Below are positions 1 to 64,000 of a DNA stretch of 64,000 nucleotides, piece by piece (the stretch's first letter is position 1; the number at the start of each line of letters is the position of its first letter). The notes below the pieces were generated by a model. It was not told the DNA's origin and did not search any database. It saw only the letters and a program-made list of their open reading frames with translations. The position numbers and the translations under genes were made by a program. The stretch lies in the IMG/VR virus record IMGVR_UViG_3300012988_000001, positions 62,001 through 126,000 of that record; one strand, 5' to 3'.

Positions 1-1030
1 TTACATGCGTTGTTCACTAGTAGATACTAAAACTATTCGTAACATTGATTTTGCAACTTACGGATATGCAGTATCTGAAACTAAGATGGATGGTCAGTAC
101 TTAAACCATACAATCATCAATAACCAATTGACCTGTACTTCCCGTAATGGTAAAGTATATGACTTCCTCGGTGCTCGTGATGAGCTAATGGCAAACCTAG
201 CACAGTCCGTACAGAAGCGTGATAATCGTTTCGGTAGCGGCGTTGTGTTCAACGGTGAATGCCTAATGATGGACGAAAGTGGACGTATTCTACCTCGCGA
301 AACTGGTAATGGTATTATCCAGAAAGCGGGCAAAGGTACTATGACACCATTTGATTCTATGCGTGTGGTATTCGTTCTATGGGATGTTCTACCTTATGAT
401 GCATTCCAAGAAGGTATTTGGGAAGTATCCCGTAAAGAGCGTCGTGAGCTATTAGAATCGGCTATTCAAGATATCGACTCTGAGTTTATTCAGATGGTTG
501 AGTACCAAAAAGTACTAAACGTTACGGAAGCATTCGAGCATAACACACTTCTAATGGAACGTGGTGAAGAGGGTTCAGTACTAAAATGTGAAAGTGCTAT
601 TTGGAAGTCTCACACATCTCCTAAGCAGTTGAAGATGAAACTCAAGATGCAACTCGACCTACGTATTGTCGGTTTCAATGAAGGTGAGAAGAAGCGTACC
701 GGGATGCTTGGTTCATTGATTCTAGAATCTGAAGATGGTCAATTGACCACAAACTGCGGTACTGGTATCAAAGAGAAAGATGCTGAGTGGACATTCAAAA
801 GTATCTGGGAAAAACGCGATGAGCTAATGGGTAAAGTTGTTACTATTGAATGTAACGAACTAACCAAAGACAAGAACTCTCTAATTCCAAAAGTGTTCCT
901 ACCTGTATTCGTGGAATTCCGTTTTGACAAAGAAACCTGCGATACGTATGAACGTATTCTAGAAATCCGTGAAAGTGCAGTAGAAGTATTTGCTCAGACT
1001 ATTTCGGAGTCACTAAAAGGTAAAAAATAA
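1..1030 (+). CDS. ATP-dependent DNA ligase, 5'-truncated by the window edge
   Basis: Motif I SETKMDG (KxDG), FNGEC, VLWD, EGSVLK, C-terminal OB domain with CGTG and FLPVFVEFRFDK; frame is open to the window start. Confidence 0.95.
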   Translation, partial: YMRCSLVDTKTIRNIDFATYGYAVSETKMDGQYLNHTIINNQLTCTSRNGKVYDFLGARDELMANLAQSVQKRDNRFGSGVVFNGECLMMDESGRILPRETGNGIIQKAGKGTMTPFDSMRVVFVLWDVLPYDAFQEGIWEVSRKERRELLESAIQDIDSEFIQMVEYQKVLNVTEAFEHNTLLMERGEEGSVLKCESAIWKSHTSPKQLKMKLKMQLDLRIVGFNEGEKKRTGMLGSLILESEDGQLTTNCGTGIKEKDAEWTFKSIWEKRDELMGKVVTIECNELTKDKNSLIPKVFLPVFVEFRFDKETCDTYERILEIRESAVEVFAQTISESLKGKK

Positions 1031-1485
1031 TGCAAGTATTCACCGTGTATATTTTCAATGAACGATTGAGAAGTGATAAAAAGCAAGGGGATTTGGCAAT
1101 CGTCGTCCCCTTTGCCATGATTGATAAGTACTCTGTTCCAATTCCCGGTTATTCTAAAATGGCTGCAATGGCAGATGCTGTGTACGGGTATGATATTGAT
1201 AAAGGTCATTTCACTACGTATAAGAATCGTCAAATCGGTTCTGGTTACAATCATAACGTACCTTTTGAGTACTTAGTAAATTCTCGTAGTATCTGGTTCA
1301 TGAATGATTACATTGGTGAAGGAATGATGCTTAACCAATTGCTTGTGGGGCAACCAACGCCCCCACAAATGTATGGTAAAAAATATTGTGAAATATCACT
1401 TGCTGGGATGAGCCATATTGAGCTATACTTGTCAGCATTGAGTGGCTACTATGGAGAAGACGATGAAATTTGCAGTGATATCTGA
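1030..1485 (+). CDS. hypothetical protein
   Basis: 151-aa ORF coupled to the ligase stop (TAATG). Confidence 0.7.
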   Translation: MQVFTVYIFNERLRSDKKQGDLAIVVPFAMIDKYSVPIPGYSKMAAMADAVYGYDIDKGHFTTYKNRQIGSGYNHNVPFEYLVNSRSIWFMNDYIGEGMMLNQLLVGQPTPPQMYGKKYCEISLAGMSHIELYLSALSGYYGEDDEICSDI

Positions 1486-2251
1486 TATTCACGGCGGGGT
1501 GGACTATCTTCATAGCGGAGACTTCAGTGATGTAGTACTAATCATTGCTGGAGACTTCGATGAAGCAAAGCGTTCCCGTTATCGGACAGAAATTGAAAAG
1601 TTGTGTGCTGTATTCAAGAATGTAGTACTAGTTCCCGGTAACCACGAGTACTATGGATCTAACATTCATAAGACTCACAAAGTACTGGAGCGTATGGATA
1701 TCGAAATCGATAACTTTATTTTTCTACAAAATAACTTTGTGTGGATTGATGATGTACTGGTTGTTGGTTCCACATTGTGGACGGACTACAACAATGATCC
1801 ATTGGTGAAGTTTGATGCTCGTATGAAGATGAATGATTACAAGCATATCCGTCATGGTACAGAATCTGAACCGTGGAAGAAAAAGCTCACAGTCGATGAC
1901 GTTGAGTTTATGCATTATGTTTCTAAGAAATATATCAAAGAAACTATTGACAGCATACGGATTCGGGTGCATAATGATATCAAGGTTGTGGTCGTCACAC
2001 ACCATGCACCAAGTTTTCAGAGTGTATCACCGAAGTACAAAAATGATTCACTAAATGCGTGTTATTGTAGTAATATGGATCAGTACATCGAAGAACTAAA
2101 GCCGAATGTTTGGATTCACGGACATGTGCACAGTAACTTCGATTACACCATTGGTGATACACGTATCATTTGTAATCCACGTGGCTATGAGTCATTCAGT
2201 GGTGCAAGTGAGAATTTTGATTACAATCCTAAATTTATTTTTGAAGTATAA
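1463..2251 (+). CDS. calcineurin-like metallophosphoesterase
   Basis: SDIHG, AGD, PGNHEYY, THHAP, HGHVH motifs; start re-assigned to ATG 1463 behind GGAG. Confidence 0.92.
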   Translation: MKFAVISDIHGGVDYLHSGDFSDVVLIIAGDFDEAKRSRYRTEIEKLCAVFKNVVLVPGNHEYYGSNIHKTHKVLERMDIEIDNFIFLQNNFVWIDDVLVVGSTLWTDYNNDPLVKFDARMKMNDYKHIRHGTESEPWKKKLTVDDVEFMHYVSKKYIKETIDSIRIRVHNDIKVVVVTHHAPSFQSVSPKYKNDSLNACYCSNMDQYIEELKPNVWIHGHVHSNFDYTIGDTRIICNPRGYESFSGASENFDYNPKFIFEV

Positions 2252-2264
2252 ACGAGGAAAACAA

Positions 2265-2942
2265 ATGAATAATACAATCGTAACACAACCACAAGCTCTA
2301 TCTATTCCTATGGTTATTGAAACTTCCCCAAATGGTGAACGTGCGTATGACCTAGGCTCCCGTCTACTTCAAGACCGTGTTATTTTCCTTGATGCTGGGT
2401 TCGATGATAATATGGCACACATCATCAAACAGTCTTTGTACTACATGGATGCACAGAGTCGTGAGCCAATCACACTATACATTACGTCGCCGGGTGGTTC
2501 TGTTCACGCAGGTCTAGGCATTGCGGATATCGTATCTATGATGAAATCCCCAATCCACACTATTGTACTAGGTATTGCGGCATCTATGGGTTGCTACATG
2601 CAGTCTACTATGGGTTCAAAAGGTATGCGTCTAGCTGGTAAACGTGCACAGATTATGGCACACCAAGTATCTTCAGGAACTCAAGGGACTCTAGCAGACC
2701 AGAAAATCTCTCTAGCTCACAGCGAACTACTAGATGAAATGCTAGCACGTGAAATCGCTGAAGCAGTAGGTGTAACTTATGAACAATACAAACAAGATAC
2801 TATTCGTGATATGTGGATGACTGCTGAACAAGCACTAAACTACGGCGAGAAAGGTTTCATTGATGGTATTATTATTGGTGACCGCAACGAAGATGGTAAA
2901 CTACTCATCGAACGTCGCGGCGGTGTGCAGGAGTACATTTAA
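2265..2942 (+). CDS. clpP: ClpP-family serine protease subunit
   Basis: SRLLQDRVIFL, YITSPGGSVHAG, catalytic AASMG (Ser), MAHQ (His), RDMWMTAEQA (Asp); RBS GAGG before ATG 2265. Confidence 0.95.
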   Translation: MNNTIVTQPQALSIPMVIETSPNGERAYDLGSRLLQDRVIFLDAGFDDNMAHIIKQSLYYMDAQSREPITLYITSPGGSVHAGLGIADIVSMMKSPIHTIVLGIAASMGCYMQSTMGSKGMRLAGKRAQIMAHQVSSGTQGTLADQKISLAHSELLDEMLAREIAEAVGVTYEQYKQDTIRDMWMTAEQALNYGEKGFIDGIIIGDRNEDGKLLIERRGGVQEYI

Positions 2943-3238
2943 TGTCGGAAAAACTACTAGTACGGGGCTTAACCGCCCCAGTTGAAGCAGAAGTTGTTAG
3001 TACTTCAGAGTTTGAAACTCTAGCGTTTGATCAAATCTCTCAAATCGCACTAGACCTTTCATTCAGCAAAGAAGCTGGTGAAGTACTAGAAGGTATGAGC
3101 GATATGCTTGAACTAATGAAAGCGATTCTTGAAGCTAAGAACATCGCACCAATGAATCTATTCACCACAGCAGAGCGTCTTCGTACAGAAGAAGGGACAT
3201 TTGCTGATAAGAAAGCAGTAAGTCAGGAGCAGGAATAA
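2942..3238 (+). CDS. hypothetical protein
   Basis: 98-aa ORF, coupled start, CTA-rich phage codon usage. Confidence 0.75.
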   Translation: MSEKLLVRGLTAPVEAEVVSTSEFETLAFDQISQIALDLSFSKEAGEVLEGMSDMLELMKAILEAKNIAPMNLFTTAERLRTEEGTFADKKAVSQEQE

Positions 3239-6030: not shown

Positions 6031-6705
6031 TTATGGTGCTGCTGTTACAGTAACTGCACAAGTAGCGGTATGAGAACCATCAGTTGTGGTTACAGTAATA
6101 GTTGCTGAACCTGCACCAACGAAAGTAACAAGACCAGTACTAGAAACTGTTGCTACACCGGAAGCACTAGTTGTCCAAGTTACTGATTTATCTGTTGCAT
6201 TTGCTGGTAACACAGTAGCCGCTAGTTGTTGTGCTGCATCACCAACCACTGCTGTAAGAGTAGTAGGTAGAACTGACACACTAGTAACATTAACTACTGG
6301 TGGAACTGGAACTGAAGTTTGTGCATTAAAATCAACTACATCAACTTCTTTACCATTGGAAAGAATGATTTTGTTAGGGAAGAATTTGTATGCATATCCA
6401 AGAACATCACCTGAATCTAGGTCATATACTTTAACTGCAAATTGATTCTTAGCTAAACCATCTTCAATTTCTGATTTAGTTGCATCAAGAGCAAGATCTT
6501 TAAAATCTTTATCTTTACTAACCATTTTCATGAAGTCGTAAACAGTACTGGTATCTTCGGTAACAAGATCGAAAACACGAGTAGAACGTTGACTGATGAT
6601 AAACAAATCATCAGCGATTGCTTGTGTATCGTTATCAACTGCGGCAAAAACACTAATACCACCAACATTAAATGGTAATTCTCCAAATTTAGCTATAGGC
6701 TTCAT
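6031..6705 (-). CDS. virion surface protein with C-terminal bacterial Ig-like (Big_2) domain
   Basis: C-terminal VTSVSV...LAATVLPANATDKSVTWTTS...ATVSSTGLVT...GSATITVTT is a typical Big_2 repeat; RBS AAGGAG and TAAATA upstream. Confidence 0.85.
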   Translation of the reverse strand: MKPIAKFGELPFNVGGISVFAAVDNDTQAIADDLFIISQRSTRVFDLVTEDTSTVYDFMKMVSKDKDFKDLALDATKSEIEDGLAKNQFAVKVYDLDSGDVLGYAYKFFPNKIILSNGKEVDVVDFNAQTSVPVPPVVNVTSVSVLPTTLTAVVGDAAQQLAATVLPANATDKSVTWTTSASGVATVSSTGLVTFVGAGSATITVTTTDGSHTATCAVTVTAAP

Positions 6706-6736
6706 TGGTTTCTCCTTTATAAAAAGTACTTTAGTA

Positions 6737-6747: not shown

Positions 6748-7782
6748 TTACAGGTAGGATGCATCCAACATAACTTTAAGTTCAGTAACATCACCAGTAA
6801 CTAAATGTCTTGCAACAATAGTTCCAACAAATAAACCAGTTGGAATTTCACCCGGTGGTGGAGAGATTTCTAAGTACTGATTAAAGAATTTATAACGTTC
6901 GATATTCTGAATAGCAGTGAAATTAGAATTAACAGCACTATCAGTTATATCACGACCAAATTTATAATCTTTGAATACGTACTTACCATTAATGAATTCC
7001 AATCTCCAAGAAATATTATTATCATTAATTATACCTTGGTTATTTCCATAATAAGTCATAGTGACACCATACAGATCGGTAATTTTACCAATGAATTCAG
7101 TGGATACAATACCAATACTAAATGGTAATGTATATTCTTGATTTTTTGTTTTATCCATTTTAATAGTATAAGTACTGTCAACTGGAGCAACCACTGGATT
7201 ATACGCACCTGTTCCGTTTGGTTGCCATAACCTTGCTGCCATTGCAACTTCAATAATTCCATCCGTCGCGGTGACCATGCTTAAATTTGAATTACCGGAA
7301 CCGATCATTAATTCGTTGGGTTTACCAACTTTATGGAATGCAACTTGTGCACCATCAGGCTCAAATGTAGGAGGAACTGGAACTGGCATTGGAACATAAA
7401 AGATGCTATAATCAGGAACGAAAAACGTTATGTCGTTAGAAAGGTGGATTAGATTTGATTGTAGTTTTATGCAGTACCCAACAGTTGCACTTGTATCATC
7501 AATTGCACGTATAAAGAAAGTTCCATTGGAAATAGAAGATAGTACTTCATCATCTGTTGCAGTATTGGAAAGTACTTGTCCAGAAGTTGACATACCAGTG
7601 ATGGTTAGTTTAATATGTAGTGTGTTGGTTGCAACATCTAGTAAATCAAAACGTTTGTTAGAACGCTGCTTCACTATACGCAAATCTTTGATTGTAGTTC
7701 CATCTGTCAGTTTTGCTCCAGCAACAACCATACCAGTAACACCGAATGGCAGTTGATAACTACCCGCAATAGGTTTACCCAT
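6748..7782 (-). CDS. putative virion protein; N-terminal domain paralogous to 6031-6705
   Basis: KPIA...LPF.V.G...I..QRS...FDL shared N-terminus; RBS AAGGAG and TAAATA upstream. Confidence 0.75.
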   Translation of the reverse strand: MGKPIAGSYQLPFGVTGMVVAGAKLTDGTTIKDLRIVKQRSNKRFDLLDVATNTLHIKLTITGMSTSGQVLSNTATDDEVLSSISNGTFFIRAIDDTSATVGYCIKLQSNLIHLSNDITFFVPDYSIFYVPMPVPVPPTFEPDGAQVAFHKVGKPNELMIGSGNSNLSMVTATDGIIEVAMAARLWQPNGTGAYNPVVAPVDSTYTIKMDKTKNQEYTLPFSIGIVSTEFIGKITDLYGVTMTYYGNNQGIINDNNISWRLEFINGKYVFKDYKFGRDITDSAVNSNFTAIQNIERYKFFNQYLEISPPPGEIPTGLFVGTIVARHLVTGDVTELKVMLDASYL

Positions 7783-9710: not shown

Positions 9711-11189
9711 ATGAAAAATCTAAACGTAAACTTCATTCTAAACGTAGACAGCTACAAAACCGCTCACGGTATGATGATGAAAGAAGGTGTAGTTGCACTT
9801 GAATCAAACATCATTGCTCGTAAGCCTACTCCTTATGCTACACACGTAGTCATGATGGGTATCCAAATCTACCTACAAGAATATCTTGATATTACCATTA
9901 CAACTGCTGATATCGATGAAGCTGAAGAAGAAACCGCATCTCGCGGGGATTATTTCGACCGCCCATTCTGGGAACATATCGTAGAAGTACACAAAGGTCG
10001 TGTCCCTCTACATATCCGTGCTATTCCTGAAGGTACTGTTGTACCAGTAGGTATGCCACTAGTACGCTCTATGAGTACTGATCCAGCAGTATTAGTAATT
10101 GCTAGCTACATTGAAACTCAACTTCAACGTGCTATTCAGTTCCCAACAACTGTTGCTTCTAACGCTCGCAGCATCAAGTCCTTCTTGGCTGATACAATGG
10201 AACGTCACAGTGGTCAACGCTTCGTTGATTACCATCTACACAACTTTGGTGATCGCAGTGCATCTTGCTACGAAGCAGCATGGCTAGCAGGTGTTTCACA
10301 TGCTGTAGTGTTCAGTGGTTCTGATTGCCTAATGGCAAACCGTTACATTAAACACTACTATCACACTAAGAAAAACTATCTAAGCAGTGTGATGGCAACC
10401 GAGCATAGTGCTACCTGTTCTAACTCCGACGCAGACAAACGCGACGACTTCAATATGGCCCTAAAAATGGTTCGTATTTGGGAGAAAATGTGTGATGATT
10501 ATATTGCAAAAGGTTCCGTTGGTATTCCACCAATTGTATCAATTGTAATCGATACATATGATGCATATCGCTTTGTTCGTGAGTTTATCGGTACTCGTCT
10601 AAAAGCAACTATCCAAGAGATCGCTGCTAAATGTCCGGGTGCTAAACTTGTAATGCGTCCAGACAGTGGTGACCCAACAACTATGCCTATTGAAATCCTA
10701 GAGATTCTAGCAGACAAGTTCGGTACTACTCTAAATGCTAAAGGTATGCGTGTTCTACCATCTTACATTGGCGTAATCCAAGGTGATGGTATCGAAGAAG
10801 ACTCTATCCGTGCAATCGTTGCAAACCTTGACAAACACAATCTATCCCTAGAGAACATCGTGTTTGGTATGGGCGGTAAGCTAGTACATCCACCTAAAGG
10901 TCGCGATACATACTCATTCGCCATGAAAGGTTCTGCACAACAACTATCAGAAGGTACTTGGGAAGACCTATTCAAAGACCCAATCACTGACGTTGGTAAA
11001 CGTAGCCTACGTGGTCGTGTAACTACTTACAAGTGCAAACAAAGTGGTAAAATCATGGCTGAACGTGTAGAGCTAGCAGCAGTAAATCCATTCCTAGAAG
11101 ACATGATGGTTGATGTTTATAAGGATGGCGTAATTATGAACCTAAGCACTTTCGATGAAGTTCGCGAACGTGCAAACAAAGGTCTATAA
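9711..11189 (+). CDS. nadV: nicotinamide phosphoribosyltransferase (Nampt/NadV)
   Basis: DSYK, HNFGDRS, ATEHS, VIDTYD, MRPDSGDP, IQGDG, FGMGG, KDPITDVGKRS. Confidence 0.95.
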   Translation: MKNLNVNFILNVDSYKTAHGMMMKEGVVALESNIIARKPTPYATHVVMMGIQIYLQEYLDITITTADIDEAEEETASRGDYFDRPFWEHIVEVHKGRVPLHIRAIPEGTVVPVGMPLVRSMSTDPAVLVIASYIETQLQRAIQFPTTVASNARSIKSFLADTMERHSGQRFVDYHLHNFGDRSASCYEAAWLAGVSHAVVFSGSDCLMANRYIKHYYHTKKNYLSSVMATEHSATCSNSDADKRDDFNMALKMVRIWEKMCDDYIAKGSVGIPPIVSIVIDTYDAYRFVREFIGTRLKATIQEIAAKCPGAKLVMRPDSGDPTTMPIEILEILADKFGTTLNAKGMRVLPSYIGVIQGDGIEEDSIRAIVANLDKHNLSLENIVFGMGGKLVHPPKGRDTYSFAMKGSAQQLSEGTWEDLFKDPITDVGKRSLRGRVTTYKCKQSGKIMAERVELAAVNPFLEDMMVDVYKDGVIMNLSTFDEVRERANKGL

Positions 11190-11196
11190 TCTTTTA

Positions 11197-11223
11197 GGGG
11201 AGTCTAGTACTCCCCATTTTCTT
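11197..11223 (+). terminator. intrinsic terminator of the NAD operon
   Basis: GGGGAGT-CTAGT-ACTCCCC-ATTTTCTT. Confidence 0.8.
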
Positions 11224-14309: not shown

Positions 14310-15071
14310 ATGGATTTACAAAAGTTTTTAGATAACAAAGGTAACCGTCGCATACTAGTAATTAGTGGTGCTGGTCTATCAGCAGAATCTGGTATCAGTA
14401 CTTTCAGATACGACGAAGATGCGTTATGGGAAAATACCAATGTAAACCATGTTTGTAATATCGCTAACCTTTCTACGCACTACTACAAAGTTCATTCCTT
14501 TTACAATACATTACGTGTGAACTTAGGAAGCAAAGAACCAAACGCTGCTCATTATGCTATATCAGAGCTAGAAGCAATTTATGGTGATGAGAAATTCTTA
14601 CATATTACGACGAACGTAGACGATCTATATGAACGTGCTGGCGGTACTGCTATGCACCTTCATGGTAATCTCCGTGAAATTGTAGAAGGATATTCTCTCG
14701 CTGATAATGCATACAATGTAATTGATGTTGGCTATACTCCTTATATCCCTAAAGAGGATGTATTTGCTAAACCTAATATTGTAATGTTCGGGGAGTCCGA
14801 ACGTTACGTTGATGGTAAACGTATTCCATTGTATGAAGATCGCAATAAAGTACTTGCATCCTTAACGGATCTAGATATGGTAATTGTGGTTGGAACTTCT
14901 GATTTAGTAGTCCGGTGGTCTGGAATGGTTGGAATGTCACCCGCTTATACATATCACGTCAACATTCGTAAGAATGAAAATGATTGGATGTTTACTGAGA
15001 AAGTGTACAAACCAGCTACCGAGGCCATACCAACAATAATTCAAGATATAAAGTTGAGGATGGAACTATGA
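14310..15071 (+). CDS. Sir2/CobB-family NAD-dependent deacylase
   Basis: SGAGLSAESGISTFR, EPNAAH, TTNVDDLYERAG, HLHG, KPNIVMFGE, VVGTS. Confidence 0.92.
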   Translation: MDLQKFLDNKGNRRILVISGAGLSAESGISTFRYDEDALWENTNVNHVCNIANLSTHYYKVHSFYNTLRVNLGSKEPNAAHYAISELEAIYGDEKFLHITTNVDDLYERAGGTAMHLHGNLREIVEGYSLADNAYNVIDVGYTPYIPKEDVFAKPNIVMFGESERYVDGKRIPLYEDRNKVLASLTDLDMVIVVGTSDLVVRWSGMVGMSPAYTYHVNIRKNENDWMFTEKVYKPATEAIPTIIQDIKLRMEL

Positions 15072-15436
15072 GTGTAGTTATCAGGACGTATATTCTATAC
15101 GGAGCTAAAGTAGATACAAGTAATTATGATAAAAATCGCTTTGAAGATGAACAGGACTTCATCGATTACATTTATGATGTAATCAACATTGATGACTGCC
15201 CGTACAAAGTAATCTATAATGAGATGGACAATTCTTATTACTACGGTTATATTATTGACGAAGCAAGTGATTCACATTGGGATACAAAGTACTTAAGTTC
15301 TCGTACTTTCGATGAGATCATTAGTGAAGTTAGTACAGAAGTGAAAGAATCCCTTGATTGGATGTTACATATTCACTTCAACATGCGTAGCGAGACTAGC
15401 GATATTAATTTCAGAATATTGACAGTTTATTGCTAA
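15068..15436 (+). CDS. hypothetical protein
   Basis: 122-aa coupled ORF. Confidence 0.7.
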   Translation: MSVVIRTYILYGAKVDTSNYDKNRFEDEQDFIDYIYDVINIDDCPYKVIYNEMDNSYYYGYIIDEASDSHWDTKYLSSRTFDEIISEVSTEVKESLDWMLHIHFNMRSETSDINFRILTVYC

Positions 15437-15445
15437 GAAGGTAAA

Positions 15446-16003
15446 ATGGGTTATGAACAAGTTCCATTCGGTACACGTAGCCAACAAGGTGATTGTGTAT
15501 TCGTTTGGATATATGCAAAAAACTGTACACCTTACCAAAACTATCCATACAATGACATTCCTAATGTAACTCTAGTACTATCAGAGTTACGTTGGGATGG
15601 CCTAATGGGTGCAGTTGGTGGGGCAGTAGAAACAGATGATGTTTCGTTAGAAGAGGCCGTTAAACGGGAAGCGTGGGAAGAGATTCACTATGATCTACCG
15701 ATTGACAGATTAGAACCACTACAAACGTTGAAGAACCGTTATGGATCTCACAACCATAGTTTCTCACTTGAAGTATCGTATGAGGAATTATTAGAGATTC
15801 GTAACCATGCTCATTTGGGCGAGCACTTTAGTGCTGAGAACGCTGGTGTAAACTTAATGCACATTTGCCGTTACCAGAAGCCTAATAAAGTTGAATGCGG
15901 ATATAATATCCTTTTGGAACAGTATTTCGTGGGTTCTTCACGTGAAGAGTTACAGTACTTAGTAGAGTCTAAGAACTTACTCGTAAATTACACGGACAAA
16001 TAA
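15446..16003 (+). CDS. Nudix hydrolase, NUDT16-like
   Basis: LRWDGLMGAVGGAVE...SLEEAVKREAWEE Nudix box plus YEELL, H..ENAG and LLEQYFVGSSREEL resembling NUDT16 RFDGRLGFPGG...LEELL...FLENSFIGSAREQL. Confidence 0.8.
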   Translation: MGYEQVPFGTRSQQGDCVFVWIYAKNCTPYQNYPYNDIPNVTLVLSELRWDGLMGAVGGAVETDDVSLEEAVKREAWEEIHYDLPIDRLEPLQTLKNRYGSHNHSFSLEVSYEELLEIRNHAHLGEHFSAENAGVNLMHICRYQKPNKVECGYNILLEQYFVGSSREELQYLVESKNLLVNYTDK

Positions 16004-22498: not shown

Positions 22499-23608
22499 AT
22501 GTCTAAATTAGTAAATGCAAGTCCAGAAGAAATTCGCGAGTACTTTAAAGGTCATGGTGTTCGCTGGGTTGAAACGTTCAATAACAATAACGTTCCTGAT
22601 GAAATCATTATGGAATTCAAAGATCGCATCTTCCGTGGTGATAGTTTTTCTCGTGCAGATGCAATCATTAATATGATGGTTGCAAACAATCGTCAGATGC
22701 CAAAAGAACTATTTGATATCATTGATGCGAAGTTTGGCAGTATTCGCTTCTATCACATTGATAAGGTGTACGATTTCGTTGGGTATCTAATGGGTTTACC
22801 TGTTGAACAGGTAGCTCGCCAAAGCTATCATGCGTGTACTACACTAGAACGTGTACCAAACGTACCACTAGAGTTTGTTGAAATGGTTCTTGGGCTTGAA
22901 TCTGATTCGCGTATGAAGCATGATGCAGTAGATAAGATGTTATCCAAACCAGAACATCCTATTCTACCAGAAGTCTATGATTATCTCGTTGAGTACTTAA
23001 AAACTCATTACCATCCGTATTACCTAAATGCACGGTCATACGAAGCTGGTAACATTGAAGTGCAATTGTTTACAGTTGAAGAATACATTTCACTTGTATC
23101 ACCACATCGTATCATTTCATTCTTTGATTATGGTCACGTATTATTTGATAGTGAGAGTATTTTAAAATCAGCATATAACACACCAACTGTTATTCAACTA
23201 GTGGTTGATAAAATAAACGAAATGATTGATGATGGTAAAGCTCGTCCACTATCTAACAGTGACTGGGTTATTACCAAAACATTGATTAAAGATCATCCAG
23301 ATTTTGAAAAAATTCGTGATGCGTTTACTTCACAACGTGAATTGTATTCGCGTAATGAACTAGTTTGGGATGATGTTGACAAACATATCGAATCTGGTAA
23401 AATGGAATCTGAAGTACTAGAAGCTGTACTTCTACGCCTAGATGCACCTTTGTGGTTCACTGATAAGTATCAAAGTAAAATTCTACAAATTATGACTCGT
23501 TTCCAAATGGAAAATAATGTTCATAATAATGTTCTTGAATCATTTGGTCGTGCGTTCAATCATCTTCATGAACCACTAGATCCGTGGAATGTAATCCGTC
23601 CCTACTAA
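22499..23608 (+). CDS. hypothetical helical protein
   Basis: 369-aa ORF, RBS AAGGG. Confidence 0.8.
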   Translation: MSKLVNASPEEIREYFKGHGVRWVETFNNNNVPDEIIMEFKDRIFRGDSFSRADAIINMMVANNRQMPKELFDIIDAKFGSIRFYHIDKVYDFVGYLMGLPVEQVARQSYHACTTLERVPNVPLEFVEMVLGLESDSRMKHDAVDKMLSKPEHPILPEVYDYLVEYLKTHYHPYYLNARSYEAGNIEVQLFTVEEYISLVSPHRIISFFDYGHVLFDSESILKSAYNTPTVIQLVVDKINEMIDDGKARPLSNSDWVITKTLIKDHPDFEKIRDAFTSQRELYSRNELVWDDVDKHIESGKMESEVLEAVLLRLDAPLWFTDKYQSKILQIMTRFQMENNVHNNVLESFGRAFNHLHEPLDPWNVIRPY

Positions 23609-23746
23609 AAAATACGAAAAGTACTAAGCCGTGCTTCTGGCAAAATCCAGTATAAGTCCGTACCGCACAGCGAATTTGTTGATATCCCTACTCAAGCGAT
23701 ACTACCAATCAACAGGCGAAGTACTTTTCCCTTTAAGGATAAATTT
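23609..23746 (+). other. structured, in-frame open intergenic spacer
   Basis: GAAAAGTACT 23616-23625 pairs AGTACTTTTC 23720-23729; inner helices; 46 sense codons in frame with both flanking genes. Confidence 0.5.
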
Positions 23747-23965
23747 ATGAAAGCAAAAGAATTAGCCAAGTTTCTAATGGAACATCCAGAAGCAGAAGTT
23801 GTGATGGATGAGTATGCAGGTCTACATTTCACAGTTGATGTAAACGTTGCAGTACTACACACTAAAGGTACACACCTCCCGGATTTTCACAATTCTGGAA
23901 CAAACTCTATTCAAGACAATGGCAAATGCAAAGTAGATGTTGTACACTTAGGGAGGACAGGTTGA
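23747..23965 (+). CDS. hypothetical protein, MKAxxLA...P.AEV family
   Basis: 72 aa, RBS AAGGA. Confidence 0.7.
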   Translation: MKAKELAKFLMEHPEAEVVMDEYAGLHFTVDVNVAVLHTKGTHLPDFHNSGTNSIQDNGKCKVDVVHLGRTG

Positions 23966-24594
23966 ACGCATGTGACAAGTACTATTGGATTATCGATCAT
24001 CCAGCTTTCATCAATAAAGGTTTCGTAAAAGTAGAACTCGATGTTGATCCACATATGGTATGTCCAACAACCAACCGTATCGAAGATTTCTCCCGTCTAA
24101 ACACCAAGCACCGTCTATGGGTAGAGTTAATGGTTCCATATTTCGATACGGACATAAATGAATGGCGGCACTCGCATGATTACACGTGTGACACTGGTGG
24201 TGACACATGGGAAGAGATGATCGAGAGTCTCTATTCTTTAGTTCTGAACAAATACGGTTCATACACCGACGATGATGTTGCTAAGAAAAACTTCGAAGTA
24301 CATGGTATTCGTATACACAGGCAGACTGTAAAATCGAAGACTCGAAGACTAAATGTTCGCTGGAATTTAAATCAACCCAAATGGAGTGATGACATTCTCA
24401 AAGAACATTACATCGAAACCATTCAGGAAGAGGTGAAAGAAGTTCAAGGTACGATTTTAGCCTTGACAGAATATCGGAAGACGTGTAATATATCCGAATA
24501 CGCAGACGTGGATGCCGAAATGGAAAAAATGCAATTCATTCTATTCGAACAGCAACTATCACTTCAAACAGGAATCGACTTGGTGAGGAAATGA
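23962..24594 (+). CDS. hypothetical protein
   Basis: TTG start behind GGGAGG. Confidence 0.7.
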   Translation: MNACDKYYWIIDHPAFINKGFVKVELDVDPHMVCPTTNRIEDFSRLNTKHRLWVELMVPYFDTDINEWRHSHDYTCDTGGDTWEEMIESLYSLVLNKYGSYTDDDVAKKNFEVHGIRIHRQTVKSKTRRLNVRWNLNQPKWSDDILKEHYIETIQEEVKEVQGTILALTEYRKTCNISEYADVDAEMEKMQFILFEQQLSLQTGIDLVRK

Positions 24595-28813: not shown

Positions 28814-29259
28814 TGTTACAACAAGAATGCAATAACATAAAAGTTAATCCATTCTACATGGATCGCAACGCAAGCGACTTTTTAGGGTTTTTGCCAGTAC
28901 TTGACCATGAAGAGAACAGTTATTACACTGTTGAAAATATTCATCCAGAAAAGAACTACGAACGTGTTTCACCAGTATTTGGTGAGTACAACACCGATGT
29001 TAGAACTGAGAAGGAATGGTGGTACGAACAGGAACAATTACCCAAAGGAAGCCGGGAAGTGCACGTTTTAGACCATGAATTCTATCGTGGTGAGGTGTTG
29101 GAGCGTATTGCTCGTTGCCCTTACTGCGTGTGGTTTGTGGGCTGTGATGACGGTGACAAGTTCATGCGGTTCGAGAGTAAAGAAGCAGCCCTAGAGTTCT
29201 TCAAATACATCGATTTCTACGACGAAATTGATGCACATCCCCTTTGCCAGTACTGGTAA
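28813..29259 (+). CDS. hypothetical protein
   Basis: Coupled TAATG start, followed by terminator. Confidence 0.7.
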   Translation: MLQQECNNIKVNPFYMDRNASDFLGFLPVLDHEENSYYTVENIHPEKNYERVSPVFGEYNTDVRTEKEWWYEQEQLPKGSREVHVLDHEFYRGEVLERIARCPYCVWFVGCDDGDKFMRFESKEAALEFFKYIDFYDEIDAHPLCQYW

Positions 29260-29260
29260 T

Positions 29261-29285
29261 AAAAGCACCCATCGGGTGCTTTTTG
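29261..29285 (+). terminator. intrinsic terminator
   Basis: AAAAGCACCC-ATC-GGGTGCTTTTT. Confidence 0.88.
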
Positions 29286-43423: not shown

Positions 43424-43450
43424 ATTATACGTAAACTAATGGAGGGAAAT

Positions 43451-43804
43451 ATGAATTTCGAGTTTATTAGAAAATTCTGGAAACCAATAGCAGTACTTAT
43501 TATTGTTATTTGTTCATTCTTTGGTGGTATTAAAACTCATATTGTATATGAGGGATATAAAGAAAACCTAGAAGCCAGAATAGAGAAAAAGTTCGATAAG
43601 GGAATTGCCGAAATGCAAGCACAAGGTGCTAAGAATTTGGTAGATTCACAAGAACTACTTAAGAAAAATAAGGCTGAAATCATTGAGAAAGAAGTCCCAG
43701 TAATTGTTGAGAAAAAGGTATATAAAAACCCATCTCTCGATCAAGACGGTGTGGATGTTCTTAAAAAACTCAAAGAAGAATCAGCCAAAAAGAGGACTAA
43801 CTAA
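43451..43804 (+). CDS. i-spanin (Rz-like)
   Basis: N-terminal TM segment then charged helical periplasmic domain; adjacent to a lipoprotein gene. Confidence 0.8.
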   Translation: MNFEFIRKFWKPIAVLIIVICSFFGGIKTHIVYEGYKENLEARIEKKFDKGIAEMQAQGAKNLVDSQELLKKNKAEIIEKEVPVIVEKKVYKNPSLDQDGVDVLKKLKEESAKKRTN

Positions 43805-44136
43805 TGCGTAAAATTATGCTTGCAATCGTAGCAGGTTTCATGTTATTATTCACTCTTACTGGTTGTGCTCCTAAAGTTGAAGTAAAACCTATCATAGTAC
43901 AAGAAGTCCTTCTCAAGAAATGTACCTCTGACACTCCAGTGCCAGAAATCCCAGCACGTGATGCTGATGGTAAAATAATGCTTGACGAAGAAGGTAAACA
44001 GTTGTATGATGGTAAGGAAACGATGAGAGTACTCATTAAGTGGGATGATATCTACACTGATTGTGCAATGACACATGATGCATTAGTAGATGTTATAAGA
44101 AAACTTCAAGAAGCGAATAAAATCGAAACCAAATAG
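43804..44136 (+). CDS. o-spanin (Rz1-like lipoprotein)
   Basis: Signal peptide with lipobox LTG-C, Pro-rich mature part, late Cys and H..L motif. Confidence 0.82.
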   Translation: MRKIMLAIVAGFMLLFTLTGCAPKVEVKPIIVQEVLLKKCTSDTPVPEIPARDADGKIMLDEEGKQLYDGKETMRVLIKWDDIYTDCAMTHDALVDVIRKLQEANKIETK

Positions 44137-44145
44137 AGGTGATTT

Positions 44146-44790
44146 ATGCTGGGTTATAAAGTAAAGACTGCGTTACCATTAGATGTTATGAAAACTCTTA
44201 AAACTTCTGGTCCTATGACCAGTGCTGAAATTGACGGTGTTAAGTTTAACTATTTCCCAGAAAAAGTTGCTACTTTTTTAAAGAATACTAAATGCATTTG
44301 TTGTGGTATTGAAGCACACGAAGTACGTTTGGAGGAAGGTAAAGGTACTCATGCTATCTTTGGTATGATGCACCTGAACGTATACGCAAGGGCTGAAACA
44401 ACATGGGGTGAGTACTGGGAACTTATGACAGTTGACCATAACATTCTCAAATCACTAGGTGGGCCAGATGTTGAATCAAACTTCAACACCATGTGCCGTA
44501 AGTGTAACCAGCTTCGTGGTTCTCGTTACCCGAATCTTGAAGACTTCCTAGCTCGTTACAAAGAGCATGGTCAGTCCTTGATCACAAGTCGTGCAACGTC
44601 CCTACACCATTACCGTTTGCGTAAGCGTGAAGAGGGTTCAGAAGAGTATCAGGCAATCGTGAAGCATCGCAATGAGATGCGTGAAGCCAAGGTTGCAGAT
44701 TATCTCAGCGGCCTATGTGCGAGCCATGTAGGGGCTTATAACCGTCATAACAAGGCGTTGAAAAAAGCCTTGACAGCCGAAACAAAATAA
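44146..44790 (+). CDS. HNH endonuclease
   Basis: CICCG ... TVDHNILKSLGG...NFNTMCRKCNQLRG. Confidence 0.85.
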   Translation: MLGYKVKTALPLDVMKTLKTSGPMTSAEIDGVKFNYFPEKVATFLKNTKCICCGIEAHEVRLEEGKGTHAIFGMMHLNVYARAETTWGEYWELMTVDHNILKSLGGPDVESNFNTMCRKCNQLRGSRYPNLEDFLARYKEHGQSLITSRATSLHHYRLRKREEGSEEYQAIVKHRNEMREAKVADYLSGLCASHVGAYNRHNKALKKALTAETK

Positions 44791-44798
44791 CCTACACT
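44770..44798 (+). promoter_or_regulatory. sigma70 promoter in the 3' end of the HNH gene
   Basis: TTGACA-17-TACACT. Confidence 0.7.
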
Positions 44799-44800
44799 GA

Positions 44801-44827
44801 AGGAGTCCAACTTGGACTCCTTTTTTT
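44801..44827 (+). terminator. intrinsic terminator
   Basis: AGGAGTCCAA-C-TTGGACTCCTTTTTTT. Confidence 0.88.
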
Positions 44828-44840
44828 ATTGGAAAAAAAC

Positions 44841-45221
44841 ATGAAATGGCTTAGAAAAATATTTGGAGAAAAGAACGTGAGTACTAAATGGTTTTCACAA
44901 GATATAATGAAGCAATTGGCTTATAGTTATGGTACAGTTACTGATTACGGTGAGTGGAATGAAAAGACAGAAGAGTTTGCCCCGGATACCGTTCTAGAAG
45001 TGATTCACAATGAGCAATGCGATTCGACCCGATGGAATAGCGTTCACGATCTAGTTTTTGTTGACAAGTCTACTGGTGTGACGTATCATACACGGTATGA
45101 ACAGGGTCTTACCGAATCACAAATGCTCGAACCTTTTTATTATGATAAAGAGGGTGTTGAATGTGATATTGTTGAGACATGGGAAGAACAAATTACAGTA
45201 CTTAGGTGGAAACAGAAATAA
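44841..45221 (+). CDS. hypothetical protein
   Basis: ATG 44841. Confidence 0.7.
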   Translation: MKWLRKIFGEKNVSTKWFSQDIMKQLAYSYGTVTDYGEWNEKTEEFAPDTVLEVIHNEQCDSTRWNSVHDLVFVDKSTGVTYHTRYEQGLTESQMLEPFYYDKEGVECDIVETWEEQITVLRWKQK

Positions 45222-45610
45222 TGATTAAAGATATCGATTTTTCAGGACTTGAATTTGTTAGTGCAGTAAAGAACATTACTGACATGTACGATGAAAAGAG
45301 TGTGATGTGTACTATTACTTTTTTAAAAGAAGAAGATAGTATTGCTGATAAAACTGGAATTGAAGAATTGGTAGCTCGCCTCGCACTGGAAGAGAATAAA
45401 AAGTACATTAAATTGTCGTATACTTATACTATGGTAGAAAATGAGATTGATACGGAACGCCCTGTGAAGGTACTTTTCTCAGGTATAAATAAACCATACA
45501 GAAAAACCTCCCGGTGCACCGAGGACAGTACTGATCTGTTAGAGGACATTAAATTCATCGATATGATGTTTGAACGTTCCCCTAAAGAGTTGAAACGTAC
45601 CTATCTCTAA
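45221..45610 (+). CDS. hypothetical protein
   Basis: Coupled TAATG start. Confidence 0.7.
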   Translation: MIKDIDFSGLEFVSAVKNITDMYDEKSVMCTITFLKEEDSIADKTGIEELVARLALEENKKYIKLSYTYTMVENEIDTERPVKVLFSGINKPYRKTSRCTEDSTDLLEDIKFIDMMFERSPKELKRTYL

Positions 45611-62237: not shown

Positions 62238-62266
62238 GGGACAAAAAAGTAAAAATGTGATATACT
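62238..62266 (+). promoter_or_regulatory. GGGACA-class promoter (copy 6)
   Basis: TTGGGACAAA-...-TGTGA-TATACT, 17-nt spacer. Confidence 0.78.
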
Positions 62267-62297
62267 ATAGGTATCTGATGATTATTGAGATGAAATT

Positions 62298-63232: not shown

Positions 63233-63279
63233 TTATGAAGGAACAATCCTTCATGTTATAAAATTTTGGGAGAAATACT

Positions 63280-63522
63280 ATGATTAGTTTTCGTGATAAA
63301 TTAGCTCAAGGCATTTTCGAATGCAAACCAACAGTTGCTGACATTCCAAAGAAATCAGCATTTTTAGGAACAATTACAGAAGATGGTTTCTGTGATTATG
63401 ATGTACCTGAAGATACTTGGTATCTAAGTAAATCAACTGAACGTAGCAATCGCCTCCACAAAAGTACAATAGCCAGAAAACACCGCAAGGAAATGAAACG
63501 AATTCGTTTTGGTTCCGAATAA
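63280..63522 (+). CDS. hypothetical protein
   Basis: 80 aa, RBS GGGAG. Confidence 0.65.
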   Translation: MISFRDKLAQGIFECKPTVADIPKKSAFLGTITEDGFCDYDVPEDTWYLSKSTERSNRLHKSTIARKHRKEMKRIRFGSE

Positions 63523-63528
63523 TAATTT

Positions 63529-63556
63529 AAAGGACTCTATATAAGAGTCCTTTTTT
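63529..63556 (+). terminator. intrinsic terminator
   Basis: AAAGGACTCT-ATATA-AGAGTCCTTTTTT. Confidence 0.88.
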
Positions 63557-63570
63557 CATCCGAGGTAACA

Positions 63571-64000
63571 ATGGGCGTAATAGAACATATTGGTAATCTT
63601 TTTGAAAGATACAGTGATGGTTTTTCTCCTGACCATCTTCATATCATTGTACATGGGTGCAATGCACAAGGTCGTATGGGTTCAGGGTTTGCGAAAGAAT
63701 TACGCGAACGTTACCCGGATGCATACACAACTTACAACGATGCCTACAAGTTCGCCGGACTTAAGCTAGGCTCTACGATTTACCACATAGTCGATGATAA
63801 TTTAGTGATTGCAAACGCTATCACACAGGAGTATTATGGCTATGACGGTGAGAAATATGTTAGCTATGATGCTATCGATACCGTCTTTAAAGACATGAAT
63901 GAGTTTATAGCTCAAACTGGACGGATGACGCACCTCCACTTCCCCCGCCTTGGGGCAGATCTTGGTGGTGGTAATTGGACAGTGATAAAGAATATCATTG
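63571..64000 (+). CDS. macrodomain (ADP-ribose processing) protein, 3'-truncated by the window edge
   Basis: GNLF...IVHGCNAQGRMGSGFAKEL...ANAITQ...YD.I...FPRLGADLGGGNW; absent from the ORF track because it lacks a stop. Confidence 0.9.
   Translation, partial: MGVIEHIGNLFERYSDGFSPDHLHIIVHGCNAQGRMGSGFAKELRERYPDAYTTYNDAYKFAGLKLGSTIYHIVDDNLVIANAITQEYYGYDGEKYVSYDAIDTVFKDMNEFIAQTGRMTHLHFPRLGADLGGGNWTVIKNII

What the first reader, a model, noticed from the sequence alone, without database searches (positions are those of the whole stretch)
1..64000. Palindrome AGTACT is strongly over-represented
Seen: by eye I count 18 copies in the first 6 kb (96, 511, 577, 1127, 1268, 1534, 1624, 1647, 1681, 2999, 3082, 3275, 3785, 4265, 5088, 5336, 5543, 5650), against about 2 expected from base composition (assuming about 63 percent AT). 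It falls in all three reading frames (CAG-TAC-TTA, AAA-GTA-CTA, AGT-ACT) and in intergenic DNA (6725, 11206, 23620, 23720), so the GTA-CTA codon pair alone does not explain it. Established: HIP1 in cyanobacteria is a hyper-abundant palindrome tied to methyltransferase specificity. Inference: a genome-wide mark for a phage modification, packaging, nucleoid or recombination factor.
Basis: partly seen in the sequence, partly recalled or inferred. Interest (0 to 1): 0.7.

Follow-up and report, generated by a model that had tools for sequence, protein, structure and literature searches.

The report
Hyper-abundant AGTACT palindrome in jumbo phages
The six-letter palindrome AGTACT is the commonest six-letter word in this 366 kb jumbo phage and its enterobacterial relatives, kept by selection as a dense, evenly spread mark on the DNA whose reader protein is unknown and which I found described nowhere.

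Summary
AGTACT occurs 156 times in the window (21 expected) and 910 times in the 366 kb genome, where it is the most frequent hexamer. Codon effects do not explain it. A synonymous-codon shuffle gives 210±12 copies in genes against 745 observed. All three frames and non-coding DNA are enriched, and 53% of Ser-Thr dipeptides are spelled AGT-ACT. Flank preferences are two-fold symmetric (TTnC-AGTACT-GnAA) in every frame, so duplex DNA is what is recognised. Sites are kept at orthologous positions twice as often as neighbouring hexamers and are spaced more evenly than chance. The trait belongs to one clade of enterobacterial Rak2-like jumbo phages (850-1072 copies per genome in five genera). It is absent from sister lineages and from unrelated phages of the same hosts, and it coincides with total loss of GCGC and enrichment of Chi. 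A host DNA sample has about 50-fold fewer sites per kb. Best reading: a selected recognition site for an unidentified clade-specific protein, marking phage DNA as self. Candidates are a Dam-family methyltransferase and two HNH endonucleases, among 95 clade-specific proteins. The nearest analogue is cyanobacterial HIP1. I found no earlier description.

The parts
1..64000 (.). 156 dispersed copies of AGTACT, about 1 per 410 bp, in all three reading frames and between genes
   Evidence: The whole genome has 910 copies and AGTACT is the top-ranked hexamer.
6725..6730 (.). Intergenic AGTACT between two minus-strand genes (6031-6705 and 6748-7782)
11197..11215 (+). Terminator-like hairpin GGGGAGT-CTAGT-ACTCCCC followed by a T-run, built around the AGTACT at 11206-11211, just after the gene ending at 11189
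   Evidence: Sequence context printed. The hairpin is read from the sequence and was not folded.
23620..23725 (.). Two intergenic AGTACT copies (23620-23625 and 23720-23725) between the genes 22499-23608 and 23926-24594
29239..29264 (.). Example of the extended symmetric form: TTGC-CAGTACTG-GTAA
   Evidence: The genome-wide flank preference is TTnC-AGTACT-GnAA.
44146..44790 (+). HNH endonuclease gene (214 aa), conserved in all AGTACT-rich genera and not detected in the outgroups. It is a candidate sequence-specific enzyme, with no evidence yet that it reads AGTACT.
   Evidence: AF2 model with pLDDT 83; no structural match in the PDB.
43439..45610 (+). Run of four consecutive clade-specific genes (121 aa, 110 aa, the HNH protein, and a DUF7325 protein)

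Best explanation
AGTACT, in its extended weakly specified form TTnC-AGTACT-GnAA, is a selected recognition site on duplex DNA. It acts as a sequence-encoded identity mark of one clade of enterobacterial Rak2-like jumbo phages. Shown: selection keeps about 850-1070 copies per genome, one per 350-400 bp, spread more evenly than chance. Sites sit in any reading frame at the cost of synonymous and even amino-acid choices, and they are densest in the early region. Inferred: a two-fold symmetric (dimeric) protein reads the site, probably one of the roughly 95 proteins restricted to this clade. The complete purge of GCGC (6.8 per kb in the host sample) and the enrichment of Chi fit the same picture of a genome written to be treated differently from host DNA by DNA-processing enzymes. 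It could modify, protect, compact or load onto the DNA, or attenuate a nuclease.
For: Enrichment is robust to codon-aware nulls. 53% of S-T dipeptides are spelled AGT-ACT (15% expected), and S-T and V-L dipeptides are themselves in excess. Flank preferences, corrected for codon phase, are dyad-symmetric in all frames and in non-coding DNA; GAGTACTC is the rarest flank pair in all five genomes. Orthologous retention is 47% against 24% for phase-matched flanking hexamers (Munch) and 41% against 18% (PBECO4). One-mismatch variants are mostly enriched rather than depleted, as expected for decayed selected sites. Spacing is regular: in this genome CV is 0.83 against 1.00, and 84 genes lack a site against 110 expected (0 of 2000 null draws). 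The neighbouring-gap ratio exceeds a density-preserving null in all five genomes, significantly in four. Copy number is nearly constant across five genera whose GC ranges from about 28% to 38%. The trait is clade-restricted: relatives with capsid identity of 87% or more have 323 copies against 62 expected and GCGC 0 against 214, while those at 63-68% have 163 against 212 and GCGC 1235 against 1315. Outgroups and unrelated phages of the same hosts are all below the TCATGA control. The host sample has 0.05 per kb against 2.5 per kb in the phage. The AGTACT-dense zone coincides with the Chi cluster in all five genomes.
Against: No reader protein has been identified. The methyltransferase's specificity is unknown, and a 47%-identical homologue in an unrelated phage is not accompanied by enrichment. 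The HNH model matches no solved structure, and no TetR or ParB proteins are present. The clade represents one evolutionary origin, so every co-occurrence (GCGC loss, Chi, methyltransferase, HNH) counts as a single event. Conservation and regular spacing argue for selection but do not exclude a strong, site-directed repair bias combined with weak selection. More than half of the sites turn over between genera, so individual positions are dispensable. Two stretches of native DNA (genome 18371-22273 and 24209-27526) carry no site at all and remain unexplained. The host density comes from one 40 kb sample of E. coli K-12.
Confidence: 0.5

Rival explanations
1. A HIP1-type motif tied to methylation. 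The clade-specific Dam-family N6-adenine methyltransferase (genome 42014-42550) methylates AGTACT or its GTAC core. The abundance is then created or maintained by a methylation-dependent process, either a repair bias or a methyl-directed function. One such function could be switching the early promoters whose -35 and extended -10 elements overlap AGTACT.
For: This is the only DNA methyltransferase detected in the genome. It is present in all six AGTACT-rich genomes checked and absent from PA5oct, Atu_ph07, XacN1 and T4. It scores below the equivalog cut-off of GATC-type phage Dam enzymes, so it is divergent. About 18 early promoters carry AGTAC fused to TTGCA, and six of them carry a second copy fused to TG-TATAAT. 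Outer-position variants of the motif are the most enriched, as reported for HIP1 (PMC4390886). The RaK2 paper mentions unpublished restriction data suggesting DNA modification (PMC3622015).
Against: Specificity is untested, and characterised members of this family are GATC enzymes (my own knowledge). GGTACC (0 copies) and CGTACG (1 copy) are purged, which argues against blanket protection of GTAC. An unrelated phage with a 47%-identical enzyme has no AGTACT or GTAC excess. The enzyme is one of 95 clade-specific proteins. No transition neighbour is depleted, as a Vsr-type repair bias would predict (AGTATT 1.3, AATACT 0.98). Methylation would permit abundance but does not by itself explain it.
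Confidence: 0.2
2. An orientation-independent, Chi-like attenuation signal. A helicase-nuclease that degrades DNA during infection, encoded by the phage or the host, is switched off or modified on meeting AGTACT. Because the word is a palindrome it reads the same on both strands and works from either direction. Site-poor host DNA is destroyed and phage DNA is spared.
For: Selection favours coverage and regular spacing rather than fixed positions. There is a roughly 50-fold density contrast with the host DNA sample. The highest density lies in the early region, where canonical Chi is also clustered, in all five genomes. Canonical Chi is 17-fold enriched in this genome, so the phage already uses this kind of signal. 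Restriction patterns of the relative fEgEco12 match in-silico predictions, which suggests largely unmodified DNA in that phage (PMC13070987).
Against: No such nuclease has been identified. Dyad-symmetric flanks fit double-strand recognition by a dimer at least as well as single-strand recognition. No known Chi-type site is a palindrome. Physical genome ends were not determined for this contig.
Confidence: 0.15
3. Nucleation sites for a structural DNA-organising protein. A phage nucleoid or packaging protein binds every few hundred base pairs to compact or order the 350 kb genome.
For: Spacing is regular with a deficit of pairs closer than 50 bp in all five genomes. Copy number per genome is constant. 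The site is symmetric over about 14 bp. HIP1 has been proposed to act in nucleoid structure on similar statistical grounds (PMC5861425).
Against: There is no helical phasing. No HU, ParB or TetR-type candidate was found among the families tested. Other jumbo phages of similar size lack any such motif.
Confidence: 0.12
4. A neutral by-product of a context-specific mutational or repair bias peculiar to this clade's replication and repair enzymes, with no function for the site itself.
For: The trait is clade-wide and genome-wide, as a property of the replication machinery would be. Losses are mostly G2 to A and C5 to T transitions, so mutation pressure is visible at the site.
Against: A bias should give Poisson-like spacing, but spacing is regular. 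One-mismatch neighbours are enriched, not drained. Sites are conserved twice as well as phase-matched neighbours. Two native stretches of 3-4 kb have zero sites. Flank preferences extend symmetrically to four bases either side.
Confidence: 0.08
5. Binding sites for a host protein, specifically the enterobacterial nucleoid-occlusion factor SlmA. Binding would block cell division during the long infection.
For: By my own knowledge SlmA occurs in Enterobacterales and not in Pseudomonas, Xanthomonas or Agrobacterium, which would match the host distribution of the trait.
Against: The full 12-mer occurs 0 times. G at -1 and C at +1 are the least favoured flanks in all five genomes (GAGTACTC 2-16 copies). 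There is no preference for T at -2 or A at +2. Unrelated phages of the same hosts under-represent AGTACT.
Confidence: 0.03
6. A codon-pair or dipeptide preference (GTA-CTA, AGT-ACT) acting on translation.
For: Codon usage does favour AGT, ACT, GTA and CTA.
Against: A synonymous shuffle recovers only 28% of the sites. All three frames are enriched, non-coding DNA is denser than coding DNA, and flanks are symmetric although 91% of genes lie on one strand.
Confidence: 0.01

Closest known systems
HIP1 (GCGATCGC), the highly iterated palindrome of cyanobacteria
   Same: A short palindrome that is among the commonest words of the genome. It occurs in all frames and between genes, about once per gene. 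It is conserved at orthologous positions beyond background, outer-position variants are the commonest deviations, and its function is still unsettled (PMC4390886, PMC5861425).
   Different: AGTACT is 6 bp and AT-rich, against 8 bp and GC-rich for HIP1. It occurs in a virus, not a cell. Enrichment is 7-10 fold, against 15-300 fold. HIP1 has methyltransferases of demonstrated cognate specificity; here one candidate exists with unknown specificity. Here the trait is coupled to total loss of another word (GCGC) and to Chi enrichment.
Chi (GCTGGTGG), the over-represented RecBCD-attenuating site of enterobacteria
   Same: A short word enriched in 'self' DNA relative to foreign DNA, where density rather than position matters. 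This phage itself carries 57 copies against about 3.4 expected.
   Different: Chi is asymmetric and depends on orientation, and its reader is known. AGTACT is a palindrome about 16 times more frequent than Chi in this genome, and no reader is known.
DNA uptake sequences (DUS/USS) of Neisseria and Pasteurellaceae
   Same: Hyper-abundant short words dispersed through genes, which mark DNA as self for a dedicated protein (my own knowledge).
   Different: They are 9-12 bp, not palindromic, and read by a competence receptor during uptake. There is no equivalent process in a lytic phage.
ScaI-type restriction-modification target (AGTACT)
   Same: The same hexamer.
   Different: Targets of restriction are normally avoided, as some 25 other 6-bp palindromes are in this genome. 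Neither a ScaI-family nuclease nor an N4-cytosine methyltransferase was detected.

Membership tests
HIP-type hyper-abundant palindrome | A short palindrome many-fold over-represented and among the commonest words of the genome | tested here: met
   AGTACT is the top-ranked hexamer in five whole genomes, with O/E 7.5-8.9.
HIP-type hyper-abundant palindrome | Present in all reading frames and in non-coding DNA, and not explained by codon usage | tested here: met
HIP-type hyper-abundant palindrome | Sites conserved between related genomes more than background (the criterion of PMC5861425) | tested here: met
   47% against 24% (Munch) and 41% against 18% (PBECO4), using phase-matched flanking hexamers as control
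HIP-type hyper-abundant palindrome | A methyltransferase of cognate specificity encoded in the same genome (the criterion of PMC4390886) | tested here: inconclusive
   One Dam-family enzyme is present and clade-restricted, but its specificity is unknown. A 47%-identical homologue elsewhere occurs without enrichment. No raw long reads were available to call modification.
HIP-type hyper-abundant palindrome | One-letter deviations biased to the outer positions | tested here: met
   Variants at positions 1 and 6 have O/E 1.8-2.7, against 0.45-1.9 at inner positions. Between genomes, however, the least conserved positions are G2 and C5.
HIP-type hyper-abundant palindrome | Long-range (10-90 kb) periodicity along the chromosome | not tested
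   Only short-range regularity was tested.
Chi-type nuclease-attenuating site | Enriched in own DNA relative to the DNA it must be told apart from | tested here: met
   2.5 per kb in the phage against 0.05 per kb in a 40 kb E. coli sample. CAGTACTG is 0.25 per kb in the phage against 0.017 per kb in the whole K-12 chromosome.
Chi-type nuclease-attenuating site | Recognised by a translocating helicase-nuclease whose activity it changes | not testable with these tools
   This needs biochemistry.
Restriction-modification target (ScaI type) | Cognate endonuclease and methyltransferase encoded together | tested here: not met
   RE_ScaI (PF09569), N6_N4_Mtase (PF01555) and the C5 methylase family (PF00145) were not detected. 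The RE_ScaI search had no positive control.
SlmA-binding site | The 12-bp palindrome GTGAGTACTCAC, or close to it (consensus from my own knowledge) | tested here: not met
   There are 0 copies, GAGTACTC is the least favoured flank pair in all five genomes, and there is no preference at positions -2/+2.

The most novel reading that the evidence does not exclude
The clade writes a two-word self/non-self code into its DNA. GCGC, abundant in host DNA, is purged to zero so that a phage nuclease can shred the host chromosome. The palindrome AGTACT, rare in host DNA, is planted every ~400 bp as an orientation-independent 'self' signal, a palindromic phage analogue of Chi. It would be read by a clade-specific enzyme, such as one of the conserved HNH proteins or a helicase-nuclease, possibly tuned by the Dam-family methyltransferase.
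Probability: 0.12. Interest if true: 0.9.

Novelty: new variant of a known kind. Interest (0 to 1): 0.75.

Why it matters
Hyper-abundant words maintained by selection are known from cells (HIP1, Chi, uptake sequences) but not, as far as I could find, from a virus. Here the effect is strong enough to reshape protein sequences. It is shared by five genera of well-studied phages, some considered for therapy (RaK2, PBECO4/121Q, GAP32, Munch, BF), and it switches on at one node of their tree together with complete loss of GCGC. That gives a tractable system for asking what such motifs are for. These phages grow on laboratory E. coli, Salmonella and Klebsiella. The site is cut by a commercial enzyme (ScaI), which gives an immediate modification test, and the list of candidate readers is finite at about 95 clade-specific proteins. 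If the motif is a self mark, it would reveal a new way in which an apparently unmodified phage genome distinguishes itself from host DNA. It would also matter for engineering or recoding these phages, and it is a simple sequence signature for recognising members of the clade in metagenomes.

Tried and rejected
1. Order-4 Markov and dicodon-preserving nulls are partly circular for a 6-mer. I used a synonymous shuffle, a codon permutation and an analytic dicodon-Markov expectation for the three-codon frames instead. An Euler shuffle over the codon alphabet timed out.
2. Vsr-type repair signature: the transition neighbours AGTATT and AATACT are not depleted.
3. Promoter explanation: a class of about 18 early promoters carries the motif, but this accounts for only about 30 of 910 copies. 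Other sigma70-like promoters lack it, and the metagene profile is flat.
4. A scan of the viral collection for clusters of three sites found unrelated contigs. All of these were periodic coding repeats, so they were false positives.
5. Sequencing runs: only assembled contigs are held and no raw long reads, so modification could not be called. Read laying was not used because it lacked power.
6. RaK2's second methyltransferase (gp194, C5 type) has no counterpart in this genome, so it cannot explain a clade-wide trait.
7. ScaI-family and HinP1I-family nucleases were not detected (weak negatives).
8. TetR (SlmA-like) and ParB families are absent from all ingroup and outgroup genomes.
10. The HNH model searched against the PDB gave no significant match.
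11. GCGC converting to GTAC by double deamination: the numbers are far too small. GCGC expectation is 483, against a GTAC excess of about 1500, and the intermediates GTGC and GCAC are only 1.2-1.4 fold enriched.
12. Five literature searches found no description of the motif in these phages.

Full report
**What is there**

All 18 listed positions in the first 6 kb are AGTACT, and the window has 156 copies against 21.0 expected from composition. The window is bases 62001-126000 of a single 366,160 bp contig with 38% GC. This is a Rak2/121Q/Munch-like jumbo phage. Its nearest listed relatives, Salmonella phages Munch and PHA46 and Klebsiella phage fENko-Kae01, are about 77% identical in DNA, and its major capsid protein is 99% identical to that of Salmonella phage 7t3. 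Genome-wide there are 910 copies against 120.6 expected. AGTACT is the most frequent of all 4096 hexamers, and GTAC is the most over-represented tetramer at 2.18 fold.

**Is it more than composition and codons?**

O/E falls from 7.5 (order 0) to 4.3 (order 2), 2.3 (order 3) and 1.1 (order 4). The order-4 value is circular, because the pentamers AGTAC and GTACT contain the signal. I called 474 long ORFs covering 86% of the genome, 91% of them on one strand.

- Shuffling synonymous codons within each gene leaves 210±12 sites against 745 observed (z=44). Permuting codons leaves 134.
In the two frames spanning three codons, a dicodon-Markov expectation gives 101 and 155 against 161 and 257 observed.
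- Density outside called genes (3.3 per kb) exceeds that inside (2.35 per kb).
- The pressure reaches the proteins. 53% of Ser-Thr dipeptides are spelled AGT-ACT (15% expected). Ser-Thr occurs 618 times against 444 expected and 442 for Thr-Ser. Val-Leu behaves the same way.

**The DNA duplex is what is read**

After correcting for codon phase, flank preferences are mirror-symmetric. C at -1 pairs with G at +1 (1.7 and 1.5 fold). T at -3 pairs with A at +3 (1.4 fold), with C and G depleted to 0.55. T at -4 pairs with A at +4. The same pattern appears in each reading frame and in non-coding DNA, even though nearly all genes lie on one strand. The extended site is therefore about TTnC-AGTACT-GnAA. 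CAGTACTG is 20.8-fold enriched. GAGTACTC is the rarest flank pair in all five whole genomes examined. This is what a two-fold symmetric protein on duplex DNA would produce, and it argues against a translational or mRNA-level cause.

**Selection**

Three lines of evidence point to selection.

- In alignments with Munch (75% identity), 44 of 94 sites are AGTACT at the orthologous position (47%), against 23.6% for 552 flanking hexamers shifted by multiples of three. With PBECO4 the figures are 41% against 18%. More than half the sites still turn over, so density matters more than position. Losses are mainly G2 to A and C5 to T.
- One-mismatch variants are mostly enriched, especially at the outer positions. 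They look like decayed sites rather than a drained source pool, and there is no Vsr-like depletion of transition neighbours.
- Sites are spread more evenly than chance. The null draws sites at random from all AGTACT and one-mismatch positions. In the central 310 kb, spacing CV is 0.83 against 1.00, the variance/mean of 1-kb bins is 0.70 against 1.01, and 84 genes lack a site against 110 expected. None of 2000 draws reached these three observed values. Pairs closer than 20 bp number 16 against 30.

Whole-genome CV is not below 1 in every relative, because density differs by region. A statistic that tolerates slowly varying density, the mean ratio of neighbouring gaps, exceeds a null that preserves 10-kb density in all five genomes, significantly in four. 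Gaps under 50 bp are depleted in all five. There is no helical phasing.

**Where along the genome**

The metagene profile is flat except for a dip at start and stop codons. Enrichment is 12-17 fold in the roughly 40 kb early region at the contig ends, 5.7 fold in the structural module and about 8 fold elsewhere. Part of the early-region excess comes from about 18 sigma70-type promoters of the form AGTAC-TTGCA(T/A)...TATAAT. Six of these carry a second AGTACT 20 bp downstream, fused to the extended -10 element. Promoters of the TTGACA type lack the motif. Promoters explain about 30 of the 910 copies. One of them, at 11206, forms the centre of a terminator-like hairpin.

**Phylogenetic distribution**

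Whole-record counts of AGTACT, with the equal-composition palindrome TCATGA as control:

| Group | AGTACT / TCATGA |
|---|---|
| AGTACT-rich clade | GAP32 1011/169, Munch 850/149, PBECO4 891/135, RaK2 937/142, Serratia phage BF 1072/152, this genome 910/166 |
| Outgroup relatives | PA5oct 15/40, Atu_ph07 25/82, XacN1 0/127, T4 29/51 |
| Unrelated phages of the same hosts | T5 23/40, T7 4/13, rV5 16/49, FelixO1 20/31, N4 13/28, SPN3US 0/51 |

Among 80 metagenomic relatives recovered with the capsid protein, the 11 with at least 87% identity have 323 sites against 62 expected and GCGC 0 against 214. The 69 with 63-68% identity have 163 against 212 and GCGC 1235 against 1315. A scan of the viral collection for clusters of three sites returned unrelated contigs, but all were periodic coding repeats. 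The trait is therefore derived, restricted to one clade and not a general effect of the host. Its copy number is nearly constant across genomes whose GC ranges from about 28% to 38%.

**Companion features**

GCGC is absent from all five whole genomes (215-483 expected), and 13 six-base palindromes are absent from all five. Canonical Chi occurs 57 times here (about 3.4 expected). It is enriched across the clade and clustered in the same 20-30 kb zone where AGTACT is densest. CCWGG is nearly absent here (3 against 298) but not in PBECO4, RaK2 or GAP32. A 40 kb sample of E. coli K-12 has 0.05 AGTACT per kb and 6.8 GCGC per kb, against 2.5 and 0 in the phage. These genomes look heavily written at the word level with respect to host DNA-processing enzymes, and AGTACT is the one word written in rather than out.

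**Who reads it?**

The only DNA methyltransferase detected is a 178-aa Dam-family (PF05869) enzyme at genome 42014-42550. It is translationally coupled to a cytidylyltransferase-like gene, and the pair is conserved in RaK2, PBECO4, Munch and BF. The family is present in GAP32 and absent from PA5oct, Atu_ph07, XacN1 and T4. The enzyme scores below the equivalog cut-off for phage GATC-type enzymes.

Three facts weaken its case. It is one of 95 proteins conserved in four ingroup genera and undetectable in two outgroups. An unrelated 176 kb marine phage contig with a 47%-identical homologue shows no AGTACT or GTAC excess. And GGTACC and CGTACG are purged, which argues against general protection of GTAC.

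Pfam annotation of 58 of the 95 clade-specific proteins found few nucleic-acid enzymes:

- two HNH endonucleases (window 44146-44790 and genome 334179-335156);
- an endonuclease VII;
- a sigma70-family factor with regions 2 and 3 only.

Homologues of the window's HNH protein exist only in this clade. A confident model (pLDDT 83) has no match among solved structures. No ScaI-type, HinP1I-type, TetR or ParB proteins were found. The available sequencing runs are assembled contigs only. The reader protein therefore remains unidentified.

**Interpretation**

The best-supported statement is that AGTACT is a selected, dyad-symmetric recognition site kept at a dense and even coverage, a sequence-encoded identity mark of this clade. 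The likely reader is a clade-specific protein. What it does after binding is open. The leading possibilities are methylation with a methyl-directed function (the HIP1 model), attenuation of a nuclease in the manner of Chi but independent of orientation, and nucleation of a DNA-organising protein. A purely mutational origin fits poorly with the regular spacing, the enriched neighbours and the symmetric flanks. The host SlmA idea fails on the flanks. Codon-pair bias is refuted.

**Unexplained**

Two stretches of native DNA, genome 18371-22273 and 24209-27526, carry no AGTACT. They are arrays of 150-230 aa ORFs and contain none of the otherwise purged words. The second is rich in AGTACA (11 copies) and AGTATT (8 copies). 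Equivalent arrays in relatives have normal density.

**Novelty**

Searches of the held literature found the HIP1 papers (PMC4390886, PMC5861425) and genome papers on these phages (PMC5259590, PMC3622015, PMC13070987, PMC7824862), but no mention of this motif. I rate it a new variant of a known kind: a HIP-like motif in a virus, coupled to word-level purging.

Noticed in passing
whole window and whole genome: The tetramer GCGC is completely absent (0 against 483 expected in the genome, 0 against 83 in the window). It is also absent from the whole genomes of PBECO4, RaK2, BF and GAP32 and from 11 close metagenomic relatives. It is at normal levels in sister lineages and at 6.8 per kb in an E. 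coli sample. The loss switches on at the same node as the AGTACT enrichment. No HinP1I-type nuclease was found.
   Followed up: partly
window 20323, 36148, 38729, 50816 (+ strand); 30824, 47650 (- strand); genome-wide: Chi (GCTGGTGG) is about 17-fold enriched, with 36 + 21 copies against 1.9 + 1.5 expected. It is clustered in the early region (12 plus-strand copies in genome 1-18 kb). Chi is enriched in all five genera and in T5, but not in PA5oct, T4, rV5, FelixO1 or SPN3US.
   Followed up: partly
whole genome: About 25 six-base palindromes are entirely absent, including HindIII, PstI, PvuII, KpnI, BamHI, SalI, XhoI, SacI, SphI and StuI sites. Thirteen are absent from all five ingroup genomes. 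CCWGG is nearly absent here (3 against 298) but not in PBECO4, RaK2 or GAP32, so that purge is specific to this lineage.
   Followed up: partly
outside the window: genome 300-17,650 and 365,650: A class of about 18 near-identical early promoters, aaAGTAC-TTGCA(T/A)-N-(AGTAC)TG-TATAAT-g.tttgca. Six have two AGTACT copies exactly 20 bp apart, overlapping the -35 and extended -10 elements. Related words such as AGTACTTGCA also recur in BF and GAP32.
   Followed up: partly
outside the window: genome 18371-22273 and 24209-27526: The two longest AGTACT-free stretches (3.9 and 3.3 kb) lie in arrays of 150-230 aa ORFs, some of them paralogous. The DNA is native, since it contains none of the ~18 purged sites expected from composition. 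The second stretch has AGTACA 11 times and AGTATT 8 times. Relatives show normal density in equivalent arrays. Unexplained.
   Followed up: partly
window 43439-45610: Four consecutive genes conserved in all AGTACT-rich genera and undetectable in PA5oct and XacN1. They include a 214-aa HNH endonuclease (44146-44790) with a beta-rich N-terminal domain and a long C-terminal helical hairpin that matches no solved structure, and a DUF7325 protein (45221-45610).
   Followed up: partly
window 11197-11215: A terminator-like hairpin (GGGGAGT / ACTCCCC followed by a T-run) has AGTACT spanning its loop and 3' arm, immediately after the gene ending at 11189.
   Followed up: no
outside the window: genome 326002-326745, 243249-243755, 243765-244316, 262666-263808, 12305-12556: The clade-specific core also includes a sigma70-family factor with regions 2 and 3 but no detected region 4, a full-length IF3 homologue, a ClpS-like adaptor, a TelA-family protein and a ParE-like toxin domain protein.
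   Followed up: no
window 14310-16003: Sir2-family and Nudt16-like Nudix genes are clade-specific. They sit in a genome with a nicotinamide phosphoribosyltransferase and an adenylyltransferase nearby (as annotated in relatives), which suggests an extensive NAD-related module.
   Followed up: no
loci L295-L314 (Xanthomonas phage XacN1) and L137 (marine phage contig): Other large phages show their own total purges. XacN1 has GATC 0 against 1502 expected, CCWGG 0 against 771 and AGTACT 0. The marine contig L137 has CGCG 0 and GGCC 0 in 20 kb.
   Followed up: no
locus L134:6709-7602 (RaK2 gp194): RaK2 carries a C5-cytosine methyltransferase with no counterpart in this genome, so methyltransferase content varies within the clade.
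   Followed up: yes
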